Positions 31,938-57,409 of a stretch of 64,000 bases of DNA are shown piece by piece; the first letter of the stretch is position 1, and each line of letters opens with the position of its first letter. The position numbers and the translations under genes were made by a program. This DNA is from Octopus bimaculoides (lineage: Eukaryota): assembly GCF_001194135.2 (NCBI RefSeq), contig NC_069006.1:25979054-26043053 (forward strand), given 5' to 3'. The notes beneath the pieces were generated by a model. That model made no database searches. It was not told the origin of the DNA and saw nothing but the letters and a program-made list of their open reading frames with translations.

Positions 31938-32329
31938 TGGCTACATGTTAATTTAATGTATTAAGTTTACCTTTATTAATGTATATCGAATTATACATAG
32001 ATGTATATACGGGATTTACACAGGTATAAGAGTTGGAACCTGTCATCCGCTTGCAGACCATTTTCGAAAGAAATGTTTTGCCCGTTGCACTAAAACGTTT
32101 CCCTTCCCCTGCCCTAAACAGTAATTTGTCCGTCATTGGATTATAGTGATAACCTTTTGTACAACACAACTACCATTCTCTGAGGCTCTGTAATTTGTAA
32201 CTGTGATTTGTGACAGACCAAAGCGAAATGGCCAATAATCAGATTAAACCGCAAGTTTCCGAGAAGGATTCTGGGACAACAGCTCGGGGTCCATCACCTC
32301 TGGTAGTTTTACAGCGGATTTCTCTTTAG

Positions 32330-32476
32330 GGTGTCCTCATTTGTCATTCTATCTACCGAAAACCCTACGACGATGGAAGACTGGTGACATGTGCAGACGT
32401 AACCAGTTGGAACCGCACAATAAGTTCCAACTTTGTCACCTGCGCTTCAAAACATGCAGATCTGCAACGATTACAG
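32330..32476 (+). other. Candidate exon (147 nt if internal; could be part of an alternative first exon)
   Basis: Consensus donor CAG|GTAAGT at 32476/32477; acceptor TTTCTCTTTAG at 32329; repeat-free, CpG-containing context; two of three frames open. Confidence 0.5.
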
Positions 32477-32808
32477 GTAAGTTCGCCGCCATGAATTCAC
32501 TTTGAGGAAAGTTTATCAAGAAAATATATCCATTGAAAACAAAAAGACGGTGAATTGGTGACGGTGGAATTACTGGACTTCATCTGCGATGGGAGTGAAA
32601 AAGTCGTGGATGTCAAGTCAGAAATGGCATTGATAATATGGAAGCACAAGGAGACAGCAATCGTCTCTGAAGGCGGAGCAATCACCATGTGGGTGTGTTT
32701 ACCTATGTGTGGCTGGCTGGATGTACGTATATGTGTATGTACGTGTGTGTGTGTATACGAGTACGTCTGCGTGTGTGTGTGTGAGAGAGTGAGAGAGGGA
32801 GAGAGAGG

Positions 32809-32846
<38 letters not shown>

Positions 32847-33800
32847 CGTAAGCTAGATTATCCTATTCACGAAAAGGTAAAAAAAAGTCTAATTAATCGG
32901 GAGTGAAAGTCGTTTTCGAACTAGTTTCGCCGTACAAAGGGTAACAACTGCGGAGGGATAAAAGTAGCTGCAAGGGAGGTAACTCTAGGTATAGGCGTCT
33001 CGAATTACTCGGCAAGTGAAAGAATAATAAAAACTACCTGACACCTTAATTACTTACTCTCATTATATGGATTGATTATTATTAATTACAGACTATATAA
33101 TTGTTTTGTTGTCAGCAGCCCCACCACCACACATTCATTTACGGAGTTTTAAAAGTCTTTTACTGCTAAAATAGGTTGTCGAGGAATGTCTAACTTTATC
33201 GCAGAAATATAGTTTAAAAACAGGGTCCTTATTGTTGTCTCGCCCCCAAAACAATCTGTTTACCTAATTAAACAAATCAACGTTTAATTGTTAATAAAAC
33301 ATTTATGTGAGGTACATAGAAGAAGGTGTCCGATCAAAATAAAGGTGTTTTCATTTTTAAAGAACAAAAAACGAGATTACAGTTAGGGGTTGTTTTATTG
33401 TTCCCTGTTTGTAAATTCTTAACCAGCACTGAAAAATATTTCTTCTGTCCCATTTTTATCTAGACGTTTCATGAGCCTTGAGAAATTACTTCGACTTTAC
33501 TGAATCGAATTTTCCTTCTCTTATCCACGGAAAAAAAAGAGGCCGGATACATCCGACGTTTTCTGTTTGTTTATTGAGATCAAATGTTGACATGTGTAGC
33601 TTCTGTGACCGGTTATTCATTTGTTTATTTCTCTGTTATTTGAAGAAGGGCGCATTAAGAAACAGTTGAACTCAACCAAAGACTGAGTTTAAACAAACAT
33701 GTTGCTGTTGTTGCTGCCGCCGTGTTACCCCAAGTTCTGTTGAAATAAATCACCGTCAAACACAGAGTGTTGGCCAATTACCTGAGTTCTCGCTATTTTA

Positions 33801-54989: not shown

Positions 54990-55462
54990 CCTGGCATATG
55001 GTCGTGGCAGATGAAGAGATATCTCACAGTGTTAGGGACTAACTGGGACCCTGCTGGACAGGCCAACTGGGAGGAGCCAGGAATATCTCAAGACATGGTG
55101 AATGCAGCAACTCACTGCAACAGCACATTCCCCCACATCTGACCTCATCTGACAATAACCATCCCCATTGTTATCAGGGTGGGGTTATGAAAAACACACA
55201 GGTGTGACATGAAGAAGAATAAATAAATCAAAGTCGATTCAAACTGTTCAATAAGTAATCTTACCTGTGGCACATATTATATTGATCTTATAGGTTGGGT
55301 ACAGGTGGATAGGCGTCTATTATTGATATAGCTGTTGGTTCACGATGGAGGGGGGGCTGCGTTAGCAAAATATTTGACTGACATAAATATTCACACAAAT
55401 GTTTGTTTTAATTATTTGTTTTACATTTTGTCTTGTTTTGTTTTGTTTCGTTAATCAATCAG

Positions 55463-55502
55463 CCTAACAATTACTTTTCCTTGTTTACTTTTTCAGGTGA
55501 GT
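55463..55502 (+). other. Candidate recursive splice site RS4 (CAG|GTGAGT at 55496/55497)
   Basis: Canonical branch motif CTAAC (55464-55468), pyrimidine tract TTACTTTTCCTTGTTTACTTTTT, CAG, then consensus GTGAGT; second donor AAG|GTATGT at 55617/55618. Confidence 0.55.
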
Positions 55503-55804
55503 CTTTTTTCTTTAATCAATTAACATTTGTTCTGCTGATTACAATTGAAAATCCTGCAACAGCTTGAGGGAGGAGGGTTTTTAAGTGGTCCTCACCTCAC
55601 ACAGCACGTCGTTAAAGGTATGTCAACTAAAACAAAGCTAAAAAAAAAAAATAACAATAAAAAAACAAGCAAAAAAGACAATGGGATACTTTTTACTTTT
55701 CTGTTGTTTCAAAATTAATTGTATCAGTTAATATATTGATCTCTGTGTATCAGACTGCTAAGTTAATATAAAAGTGTATGATGTAAACAGCAACGTTTTG
55801 ATAT

Positions 55805-56019: not shown

Positions 56020-56275
56020 TGGAGGTGTGTGTGGCTTAGTGGTTAGGGATGTTGGATTCATGATCATAAGATTGTGGTTTCAATTCTTGGACCAGGCAAT
56101 GCATTGTGTCCTTGAGCAAGACATTTCATTTCATATTACTCCAGTCCACTCAACTGGCAAAAATGAGTTAACCTGTGAGGAACTGGCGTCCCATCCAGGT
56201 TGGGAATTCATACACCATAGAAACCAGCAAACTGGCCCTTATGAACCTAGATGACTCAGGAAGGAACTTTACTCT
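56020..56275 (+). mobile_element. SINE family C (subtype C2, different tail)
   Basis: GTGGCTTAGTGGTTAGGG A box, GGTTTCAATTC B box, TGTGTCCTTGAGCAAGACA..CCAGTCCACTCAACTGGCAAAAATGAGT shared with 7274; tail diverges after AAAAATG. Confidence 0.85.
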
Positions 56276-56734
56276 CTACTTTTCTTATTAGGGGTCATAA
56301 GACCTTCGCTACCCCTAACATCCCTCTCTGTCTTCATCTCTCTCTCCTTCCCCATCTCTACCTCTCTCCTCTTAGATCTCTAGATAGACATATCCATCAT
56401 TAACATAGATATTCAGGGATGGCAGAGAAGGCTTCTTTTTTTTATTTTGCTATTGTGTTTTTTTTGTTTTTTTTAATTGTTTCTTTTCTTTTGTTGTTGT
56501 TTTTCTATTATTTGCAAATAAAAGAGAAAACCAGAAATGGTGAGAGGAGAAGATAAATATAAACAGGAATAAAAGGTTTCTTGTTGCTACGATATTTTCT
56601 CTCGAAATGGTCATCACGTTGAGATTGGTTTCAATTGCCATTTTCATTGTTGCCCTTTTGTTTGCCGTCTCTCACTTTCAACAACAACAACAACAACAAC
56701 AAGACGAAACTCCGGTGGAAATACATTTTTACAG

Positions 56735-56805
56735 GAATTTCCTTGACCAAGATTCCCACCCCCTCACCTCTTATTCAATTTCTTAATGGAATTAGAAGTC
56801 GTGAG
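56735..56805 (+). other. Candidate small exon (71 nt)
   Basis: Acceptor ATACATTTTTACAG at 56734 and consensus donor GAG|GTGAGT at 56805/56806. Confidence 0.4.
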
Positions 56806-57409
56806 GTGAGTTTCTCAGAGCAGGGCCTCTACAAGCAGACACATTAATTCATACATTCCCACACACGCATTAATTCTCACACATTAACTCATACACACAC
56901 ATTAACTCATACACACACACACACACATACATGTATGATTACTTCCTCATTTTGAATGAAACAAGCCAAGTTTATATTTAGCCATGAGAATATGTCTTGC
57001 TTAACAATGCTTATTTTTTTGCTGTGTGCCAGATATTCTGGAGGCTGGGGAAGCAACTCTACTTAGAGTACAACCAAAATCCTCACCACTTAAAAACACA
57101 GATTGGTAACAAATTCCACAAGAGACATCAACATACTTCTCTCTCTCTCTCACTCTCTCTCACTCTCTCTCACTTCCTCTCTCTTTCTCCCCCTCTCTCC
57201 CCCTCTCTCTCTGCCTTACTGTTTCTTTTAGATGATCTAAATTGTTTAGTTACCCCTGACCCTTTCCTGCTGCTATATCCCCTTCTCCCTTCTAGATTGG
57301 TTTTATACTCCCTGTACTCCTGACTCCTGTTATACTCCCAGACACTTCTCTCTAGACGCTCTTTCTCTATTGCTACCAGACTTCCTGTATTACTGCCATA
57401 CTACAGTCA

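What the first reader, a model, noticed from the sequence alone, without database searches (positions are those of the whole stretch)
55463..55623. RS4 has full RS-exon architecture: branch point, AG|GT, and a 121-nt poison exon
Seen: CTAAC with branch A 29 nt upstream, a clean pyrimidine tract, CAG|GTGAGT, then AAG|GTATGT at 55617/55618. The segment 55497-55617 has stops in all three frames (TAA at codon 9; immediate TGA; TGA at codon 23) and a non-triplet length. Established: vertebrate RS-exons are defined as exons, then excluded via the reconstituted donor, and usually contain PTCs when included. It lies 1.2 kb before candidate exon 56735. Inference: recursive site doubling as an NMD switch, perhaps dependent on which upstream exon supplies the donor's exonic bases.
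Basis: partly seen in the sequence, partly recalled or inferred. Interest (0 to 1): 0.7.

Follow-up and report, generated by a model that had tools for sequence, protein, structure and literature searches.

The report
Candidate recursive splice site, octopus intron
A very strong intron-end signal sits directly against a very strong intron-start signal in non-coding octopus DNA, the layout used for stepwise ("recursive") removal of long introns in flies and vertebrates. It is rarer than chance, but its use could not be tested, and the "poison exon" part of the claim has no support.

Summary

The bare 9-mer YAGGTRAGT is not unusual: 4 seen, 2.3 expected. With a pyrimidine tract it is: 2 seen, both on the + strand, 0.09 expected, and 0 of 100 shuffles reach 2. 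Position 55497 is the best donor and the sixth-best acceptor on its strand. A second site at 22812 has the same layout, with a 48-nt downstream exon.

The window is octopus DNA: repeat-rich, CpG-depleted and with no identifiable coding exon. A CpG-rich island with a consensus donor at 32477 could mark a first exon 23 kb upstream.

My best reading is a recursive splice site with a cryptic RS-exon (confidence about 0.5).

The "poison exon / NMD switch" claim is unsupported:
- 58-60% of random 121-mers have stops in all three frames.
- No flanking coding sequence was found.
- The proposed downstream acceptor at 56735 is weak.
- All candidate upstream donors end in CAG.

No RNA data or related genome was reachable, so use and conservation are untested.

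The parts
55426..55452 (+). (TTTTG)5 microsatellite. It is the distal part of a roughly 110-nt T-rich stretch upstream of the site.
   Evidence: TRF; sequence
55464..55468 (+). CTAAC branch-point consensus. The branch A at 55467 is 29 nt before the last intron base.
   Evidence: An exact CTAAC at this distance is expected at 1.5% of random positions.
55469..55493 (+). Pyrimidine tract and AG exclusion zone. 18 of the last 20 nt before N-CAG are pyrimidines.
   Evidence: The acceptor PWM score is 13.4, sixth best on the + strand.
55494..55502 (+). The composite site CAG|GTGAGT: a 3' splice site abutting a consensus 5' splice site (candidate ratchet point / RS-5'ss).
   Evidence: The donor PWM score is 13.2, the best on the + strand. 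The joint score of 21.2 exceeds the 99th percentile of the best site per shuffled strand.
55497..55617 (+). 121-nt candidate cryptic RS-exon. It is non-coding, has stops in all three frames and contains a purine-rich GAGGGAGGAGGG stretch.
   Evidence: The stop pattern is uninformative (58-60% of random 121-mers). The sequence is unique within the window.
55615..55623 (+). AAG|GTATGT, the downstream 5' splice site that would define the RS-exon. It is weaker than the RS donor.
   Evidence: PWM score 9.0 against 13.2. It is the only donor of at least 6 bits within 300 nt. The chance of such a donor 25-125 nt downstream is 4.5%.
22785..22865 (+). Second composite site with the same layout: T-rich tract, TAG|GTAAGT at 22811/22812, a 48-nt candidate RS-exon (22812-22859) and the donor AAG|GTGTGG at 22860.
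32001..33600 (.). CpG-rich island (o/e 0.8-1.0 against 0.37 for the window), in unique sequence. It is a putative promoter / first-exon region.
   Evidence: unique within the window
32474..32482 (+). CAG|GTAAGT consensus donor without a pyrimidine tract. It is the candidate end of a non-coding first exon, 23.0 kb upstream of 55497.
   Evidence: 12.8 bits
16653..16661 (+). CAG|GTAAGT consensus donor without a pyrimidine tract. It is a candidate alternative upstream exon end.
56735..56811 (+). The donor is strong and the acceptor weak. Its membership in the transcript is uncertain.
   Evidence: Donor 12.4 bits, acceptor 1.4 bits. A better acceptor lies at 56376 (11.5 bits). Its open frame has no protein homologue.

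Best explanation
The site is a recursive splice site (ratchet point) with a cryptic RS-exon. It lies on the + strand, inside a long intron of an octopus transcript that I could not identify.

Proposed mechanism, inferred by analogy with flies and vertebrates:
1. The 121-nt segment 55497-55617 is first recognised as an exon. Its signals are the CTAAC branch point, the pyrimidine tract and CAG on the 5' side, and AAG|GTATGT on the 3' side.
2. The upstream exon is spliced to 55497. The best candidate is the non-coding exon that ends at 32476 beside a CpG island. This step removes about 23 kb as a first lariat.
3. The junction regenerates the consensus donor CAG|GTGAGT. That donor is stronger than GTATGT and is used in the second step, so the 121 nt leave with the rest of the intron and no trace remains in the mRNA.

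Shown: the motifs, their strengths, their rarity, their restriction to one strand, and a second site of the same design at 22812.
Inferred: transcription of the + strand, the identity of the flanking exons, and actual use of the site.
For: - The motifs are exactly as described.
- Position 55497 is the top-scoring donor and the sixth-best acceptor of the + strand.
- The joint score of 21.2 is above the 99th percentile (19.8) of the best site per shuffled strand. P is about 0.002 for two such sites on one strand.
- YYYYYNYAGGTRAGT gives 2 matches against 0.09 expected, and 0 of 100 shuffles reach 2.
- Two of 30-116 acceptor-like sites are followed by GTRAGT, against 0.02-0.07 expected. None is on the - strand.
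- An exact CTAAC lies at -29 (1.5% by chance). A single donor of at least 9 bits lies 121 nt downstream (4.5% by chance).
- The twin site at 22812 also has a 9.0-bit donor, 48 nt downstream.
- The RS donor is stronger than the RS-exon donor (13.2 against 9.0 bits), as efficient recursion requires (PMC6224609; PMC8605326).
- Both sites lie in unique sequence between repeat copies.
- A CpG island with a consensus donor at 32477 offers a first exon and a first intron of at least 23 kb. In flies, first introns are enriched for recursive sites (PMC6110457).
Against: - There is no RNA evidence and no conservation evidence of any kind.
- No gene or coding exon was identified, so even transcription of the + strand is inferred.
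- The bare 9-mer is not over-represented.
- The features were chosen after reading the sequence.
- My PWMs are generic metazoan approximations written from memory, not trained on octopus.
- Block shuffles destroy natural T-runs, so they understate the number of decoy acceptors. The conditional test corrects for this.
- If the next exon really is at 56.4-56.8 kb, the site lies about 95% of the way through the intron. Fly sites sit near midpoints and cut introns into 9-15 kb pieces.
- The RS-exon is 121 nt, longer than the usual fly figure of about 50 nt or under 100 nt.
- A 2.7-Gb genome (size from my own knowledge) would hold on the order of a thousand such composite sites per strand by chance alone.
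- Recursive splicing has not been reported in molluscs in the library searched.
Confidence: 0.5

Rival explanations
1. Chance. A T-rich tract, partly a microsatellite, happens to be followed by CAGGTGAGT in non-functional intronic or intergenic DNA. The spliceosome does not use the site.
For: - The bare 9-mer count is ordinary (4 against 2.3 expected).
- The genome is T-rich and full of simple repeats that make decoy acceptors: 116 acceptor-like sites on the + strand alone, and (TTTTG)5 directly upstream.
- On the - strand of the same 100 nt, a fair acceptor (55637, 10.6 bits) and donor (55595, 11.3 bits) can also be read, which shows how easily exon-like patterns arise here.
- No gene was found.
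- The features were picked after the fact.
Against: - Two full composite sites fall on one strand, with 0.02-0.09 expected.
- Both have a donor of at least 9 bits within 125 nt (4.5% each).
- An exact CTAAC lies at -29 (1.5%).
- The - strand has nothing comparable (best joint score 9.6).
Confidence: 0.28
2. An ordinary exon, constitutive or alternative, of a 5' UTR or a long non-coding RNA. It spans 55497-55617, is retained in mature RNA and happens to begin with GTGAGT. In the vertebrate terminology this would be an 'annotated RS-exon' whose regenerated donor is normally kept silent.
For: - It has a strong acceptor with a branch point, a usable donor and an exon-like length of 121 nt.
- It contains a purine-rich GGAGGAGGG stretch that could act as an enhancer.
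- No coding sequence is nearby, so stops are irrelevant.
- In deuterostomes, annotated RS-exons far outnumber cryptic ones, and the exon junction complex represses their recursion (PMC6224609).
Against: - An exon starts with GTRAGT by chance only about 0.06% of the time.
- The regenerated donor would be the strongest donor in the window and 4 bits stronger than the exon's own donor. In reporter assays such a difference drives skipping.
Confidence: 0.13
3. One reading: a recursive site that doubles as an NMD switch. Inclusion of the 121-nt exon would poison the mRNA, and the choice would depend on which upstream exon is joined to it.
For: - The layout allows inclusion or skipping.
- The exon has stops in all three frames and a length that is not a multiple of three.
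- Cryptic RS-exons are known to be harmful when included inside coding regions (PMC8605326).
Against: - The stop and length features are expected for 58-60% of random 121-mers.
- No coding exon flanks the site. In a 5' UTR or a non-coding RNA there is no reading frame to poison.
- All three candidate upstream donors end in CAG, so the regenerated donor is the same whichever is used.
- The downstream 'exon 56735' has a 1.4-bit acceptor.
Confidence: 0.06
4. A U1-binding or decoy element. The consensus GTGAGT recruits U1 snRNP to protect a long intron from premature cleavage at the A-rich, AATAAA-containing stretch just downstream (55640-55682), or it acts as a decoy exon, without productive recursive splicing.
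For: - A consensus 5' splice site lies about 150 nt upstream of an A-rich tract with AATAAA-like hexamers.
- The role of U1 in suppressing intronic polyadenylation is established (my own knowledge). Decoy exons are described in PMC7373989 (abstract only, listed).
Against: It does not explain why the donor is fused to a complete, high-quality 3' splice site with a branch point. It also does not explain why the twin site at 22812 has the same fused design.
Confidence: 0.03

Closest known systems
Drosophila intronic ratchet points with cryptic RS-exons (e.g. Ubx, kuz, Bx; Duff 2015, Joseph 2018/2021, Pai 2018)
   Same: - A long pyrimidine tract and AG fused to GTRAGT.
- A weaker 5' splice site a short distance downstream that defines a non-coding, out-of-frame cryptic exon.
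- A ratchet-point donor stronger than the exon's own donor.
- A setting in a long, probably first, intron.
- More than one site per locus (PMC8605326, PMC6110457).
   Different: - The organism is a cephalopod, where recursive splicing is unreported in the library searched.
- The RS-exon is 121 nt, against about 50 nt or under 100 nt in flies.
- The donor is GTGAGT rather than the fly-preferred GTAAGT.
- The site may sit close to the 3' end of the intron rather than near its midpoint.
- Neither ultraconservation nor splicing intermediates have been shown.
Vertebrate RS-exons, cryptic (CADM2-type, Sibley 2015) and annotated, EJC-repressed (Blazquez 2018)
   Same: - Exon definition comes first, followed by competition between the regenerated RS-5'ss and the exon's own 5'ss.
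- The exon length is typical of vertebrate exons.
- Stops are present if the exon is included.
- The sequence is CpG-depleted with a CpG-island-like candidate promoter upstream (PMC6224609).
   Different: - Vertebrate cryptic sites are few (about ten) and lie in very long neuronal-gene introns.
- Here the host gene, its expression and any EJC dependence are unknown.
Dual-specificity splice sites (AG|GURAG used alternately as 3' or 5' splice site; own knowledge, not checked in the library)
   Same: The core sequence CAG|GTGAG is the same, and the position could act as either an acceptor or a donor.
   Different: In that model the site bounds real exons on both sides. Here the upstream side is a T-rich tract that does not look like an exon.
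Poison (NMD-triggering) cassette exons
   Same: A short exon with a non-triplet length that carries stops.
   Different: A poison exon must lie inside a coding region and is usually highly conserved. No flanking coding region was found here, and the stop pattern is the random expectation.

Membership tests
Intronic recursive splice site / ratchet point | [quoted passage not shown] | tested here: met
   CAG|GTGAGT with a branch point and pyrimidine tract. Acceptor 13.4 bits (rank 6), donor 13.2 bits (rank 1). The joint score is above the 99th percentile of shuffles.
Intronic recursive splice site / ratchet point | Lies on the sense strand inside a long intron of a transcribed gene | tested here: inconclusive
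   No gene was identified. There is indirect support only: composite sites and perfect donors occur only on the + strand, and a CpG island with a donor lies 23 kb upstream.
Intronic recursive splice site / ratchet point | A downstream 5' splice site defines a short cryptic RS-exon | tested here: met
   AAG|GTATGT lies 121 nt downstream and is the only donor of at least 6 bits within 300 nt. The chance is 4.5%. This is longer than the usual fly distance of under 100 nt.
Intronic recursive splice site / ratchet point | The regenerated RS-5'ss is stronger than the RS-exon 5'ss | tested here: met
   13.2 against 9.0 bits with a generic PWM. All candidate upstream exons supply CAG.
Intronic recursive splice site / ratchet point | Splicing intermediates: ratchet junction reads, sawtooth read density, segment lariats | not testable with these tools
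   No octopus RNA-seq or transcript assembly was reachable.
Intronic recursive splice site / ratchet point | Strong evolutionary conservation of the acceptor|donor motif compared with its flanks | not testable with these tools
   No cephalopod genome is in the searchable DNA collections. A metagenome scan for the core 24-mer gave 0 hits.
Intronic recursive splice site / ratchet point | Position divides the intron into intermediate-sized segments (flies: near the midpoint, 9-15 kb pieces) | tested here: inconclusive
   The site is 23.0 kb from the candidate donor at 32477 but only 0.9-1.2 kb from the nearest candidate downstream exon. That exon is itself doubtful.
Poison exon / NMD switch | The exon lies between coding exons, so its inclusion creates a premature stop | tested here: not met
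   No coding exon was found in 64 kb. 17 candidate segments gave no homologue in a database that does hold O. bimaculoides proteins.
Poison exon / NMD switch | In-frame stops and/or a frame-shifting length beyond the random expectation | tested here: not met
   Both are present, but 58-60% of random 121-mers in this window have stops in all three frames.
Poison exon / NMD switch | The included isoform is detectable and is stabilised when NMD is blocked | not testable with these tools
   This needs an experiment.

The most novel reading that the evidence does not exclude
Recursive splicing through cryptic RS-exons operates in the long introns of cephalopods. This locus would carry at least two ratchet points (22812 and 55497) in the introns of a transcript with several non-coding 5' exons. 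That would be the first case in Lophotrochozoa. It would suggest that the RS-exon mechanism dates back to the bilaterian ancestor or arises repeatedly wherever introns grow very long.
Probability: 0.4. Interest if true: 0.5.

Novelty: new member of a known kind. Interest (0 to 1): 0.3.

Why it matters
Recursive splicing has been documented in flies and vertebrates. In the paper library searched here, nothing links it to cephalopods or molluscs. Octopus genomes are large and repeat-rich (own knowledge), and accurate removal of very long introns is a real problem for such genomes. A confirmed ratchet point would extend the mechanism to a third major animal lineage. It would also justify a genome-wide search comparing the sense and antisense strands of long introns. 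On its own, one sequence-only candidate is a modest lead. The more striking claim of an NMD switch is not supported.

Tried and rejected
1. Finding the host gene.
- I translated all open segments and scored exon candidates with PWMs.
- I searched 17 candidate segments as two composite protein queries. Neither gave a hit.
- The segments included the 59-aa ORF with a membrane-anchor-like start at 56607-56786, the open frame of exon 56735-56805, the 32.3-kb segments and all three frames of the GC-rich 11.9-12.3 kb block.

2. Exact look-ups. Look-ups of a 33-aa upstream ORF of the putative first exon and of two octopus proteins gave nothing, so no further octopus DNA could be obtained.

3. Other database searches.
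- A metagenome scan for the 24-mer core gave 0 hits.
- Rfam on the whole window gave nothing.

4. Repeat origin. The sites at 55300-55800 and 22400-23200 are not copies of any repeat within the window. Only neighbouring segments are. A genome-wide repeat check was not possible.

5. RNA structure. The fold of 55440-55640 is not unusual (z = -0.73). The T-rich and A-rich inverted flanks are low-complexity, at 72-82% complementarity. I rejected a structured-RNA reading and a MITE reading as unsupported.

6. Strand bias of merely strong donors (at least 11 bits) is 7 against 6, so it says nothing about orientation. Repeat orientation is also uninformative.

7. Sites 16653 and 32474 lack pyrimidine tracts.

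Full report
WHAT THE WINDOW IS

The window is eukaryotic draft assembly. It has about 35% G+C, 15 runs of N and abundant (TA)n and (CA)n microsatellites. Translations of its dispersed repeats match a UniRef entry labelled Octopus bimaculoides at 85% identity. I therefore treat it as octopus DNA, from O. bimaculoides or a close relative.

CpG is strongly depleted overall (o/e 0.37). The exception is a 1.6-kb stretch at 32.0-33.6 kb with o/e 0.8-1.0. Rfam finds nothing in the window.

THE OBSERVATION

- CTAAC is at 55464-55468, with its branch A 29 nt before G55496.
- No AG lies between the branch point and the splice site.
- 18 of the 20 nt before N-CAG are pyrimidines.
- CAG|GTGAGT is at 55496/55497.
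- AAG|GTATGT is at 55617/55618.
- The 121-nt interval has TAA at codon 9, an immediate TGA, and TGA at codon 23 in the three frames.

There is one small correction elsewhere.

IS IT MORE THAN CHANCE?

The bare 9-mer YAGGTRAGT is not. There are 4 matches against 2.3 expected on both strands, and 17 of 100 shuffles reach 4. All four are on the + strand. Two of them (16653, 32474) have no pyrimidine tract and look like ordinary exon ends.

The composite with a pyrimidine tract is a different matter:
- YYYYYNYAGGTRAGT occurs twice, at 22812 and 55497, both on the + strand. Expected is 0.09, and none of 100 shuffles reaches 2.
- Conditioning on natural acceptor-like sites avoids the weakness of shuffles, which destroy T-runs. 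Of 30-116 such sites on the + strand, 0.02-0.07 should be followed by GTRAGT. Two are. None of the 9-95 on the - strand is.
- With generic metazoan PWMs, 55497 is the best donor and the sixth-best acceptor of the + strand. These PWMs are my own approximations, not trained on octopus.
- Its joint score is 21.2, and 22812 scores 21.9. The best site per shuffled strand averages 13.9, with a 99th percentile of 19.8. The best on the - strand is 9.6.

The side features add modest weight. An exact CTAAC at 18-40 nt is expected at 1.5% of positions. A donor of at least 9.0 bits lies 25-125 nt downstream of 4.5% of positions. Both composite sites have exactly such a donor, at 121 nt and at 48 nt.

Two caveats apply. 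The features were chosen after reading the sequence. A genome of this size would also contain on the order of a thousand chance composites per strand.

SURROUNDINGS

Both composite sites lie in sequence that is unique within the window, between copies of dispersed repeats.

I could not find a gene. Open segments on both strands look non-coding. Seventeen candidate exon or ORF segments, searched as two composite queries, gave no hit. The database does contain O. bimaculoides proteins. Exact look-ups and a metagenome scan gave no additional octopus DNA or transcripts.

The best contextual clue is the CpG island at 32.0-33.6 kb. It contains a consensus donor, CAG|GTAAGT, at 32477 with no upstream pyrimidine tract. 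This looks like a promoter with a non-coding first exon. It would put 55497 23.0 kb into a first intron.

Two further consensus donors, at 12333 and 16656, could be alternative upstream exon ends. The twin site at 22812 would then lie in their intron.

Downstream, the donor at 56806 is strong (12.4 bits). A better acceptor lies at 56376. The next exon is therefore uncertain.

THE 'POISON EXON' CLAIM

Stops in all three frames occur in 58-60% of random 121-mers of this window. A length that is not a multiple of three is expected two times in three. These features show only that the segment is non-coding.

A poison exon must interrupt a coding region, and none was found. If the site sits in a 5' UTR or a non-coding RNA, NMD logic does not apply.

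The idea that the outcome depends on the upstream exon's last bases also finds no purchase. All three candidate upstream donors end in CAG, so each would regenerate the same consensus donor.

MECHANISM PROPOSED

By analogy with flies and vertebrates, the 121-nt segment would first be defined as an exon. The upstream exon would be joined to 55497, releasing a first lariat of about 23 kb. The regenerated CAG|GTGAGT (13.2 bits) would then outcompete AAG|GTATGT (9.0 bits), removing the RS-exon with the rest of the intron.

The literature supports each element of this scheme:
- Ratchet points are tandem acceptor|donor pairs with a short, poorly conserved, usually out-of-frame cryptic exon. Donor competition decides skipping or inclusion (PMC8605326).
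- Efficient recursion needs an RS-5'ss stronger than the downstream 5'ss. Most fly sites have such a 5'ss within 100 nt (PMC6224609).
- Fly sites are enriched in first introns and in introns over 40 kb. They tend to sit near midpoints and give 9-15 kb segments (PMC6110457).

The present site fits the first two points. It fits the third only in part. The first segment is long, but the site may be very close to the next exon, and its RS-exon is longer than is usual in flies.

RIVALS

- Pure chance: about 0.28.
- An ordinary retained UTR or lncRNA exon that happens to start with GTGAGT, an 'annotated RS-exon' in the vertebrate terminology: about 0.13.
- A U1-recruiting or decoy element guarding the A-rich, AATAAA-containing tract at 55640-55682: about 0.03.

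A structured-RNA reading and a MITE reading were rejected. The fold has z = -0.73, and the inverted flanks are low-complexity.

NOVELTY AND VERDICT

Recursive splice sites are a known kind. The held literature has no paper linking them to octopus, cephalopods or molluscs. If real, this would be a new member of the kind in a new lineage.

With sequence evidence only, I put the recursive-site reading at about 0.5 and interest at 0.3. The decisive data are junction, lariat and sawtooth reads in octopus total RNA, and conservation across octopod genomes. Both exist publicly but were out of reach of these tools.

Noticed in passing
window 22785-22865 (+): A second composite site of the same design: a T-rich tract, TAG|GTAAGT at 22811/22812, and a 9.0-bit donor (AAG|GTGTGG) 48 nt downstream. 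It has the highest joint acceptor+donor score in the window (21.9).
   Followed up: partly
window 32001-33600: The only extended CpG-rich stretch (o/e 0.8-1.0 against 0.37 overall), in unique sequence. It holds a consensus donor CAG|GTAAGT at 32477 and a 33-codon upstream ORF (ATG at 32229). It looks like a promoter with a non-coding first exon.
   Followed up: partly
window 56607-56786 (+): A 59-codon ORF, MVITLRLVSIAIFIVALLFAVSHFQQQQQQQQDETPVEIHFYRNFLDQDSHPLTSYSIS, whose start resembles a signal anchor. It stops 19 nt before the strong donor at 56806. It has no homologue. It could be a chance ORF, a micro-protein, or a first coding exon broken by an assembly indel.
   Followed up: partly
window 11892-12332: A GC-rich (52%) block next to an assembly gap, with long open frames on both strands (Ala/Thr/Ser-rich on +) and a donor CAG|GTAAGC at 12333. 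It has no protein homologue.
   Followed up: partly
window 55440-55520 and 55399-55680: A 20-nt direct repeat (GTTTTGTTTCGTTAATCAAT / GTCTTTTTTCTTTAATCAAT, 85% identical, 61 nt apart) brackets the composite site. T-rich and A-rich flanks form weak inverted repeats around the whole 121-nt unit. This could be the trace of a small duplication or of an inserted element.
   Followed up: partly
window 55595-55637 (-): On the opposite strand of the same segment, a fair acceptor (55637 at 10.6 bits, 55626 at 7.9 bits) and a donor (55595 at 11.3 bits) outline a 31-42-nt mini-exon-like pattern. This is probably chance. It is a reminder of how T/A-rich flanks mimic exon signals.
   Followed up: no
window 16357-16453, 22929-23032, 56030-56165: Three dispersed repeat families. 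The first two have about 7 further matches each in the window, in both orientations. The third has one further copy, at 7283-7411. Their translations match stretches of annotated octopus proteins, which suggests repeat-derived sequence inside those gene models.
   Followed up: partly
window 1290-1340 (+): A third, weaker composite site: a long T-rich tract followed by CAG|GTAATG at 1333/1334 (acceptor 11.9 bits, donor 8.1 bits).
   Followed up: no
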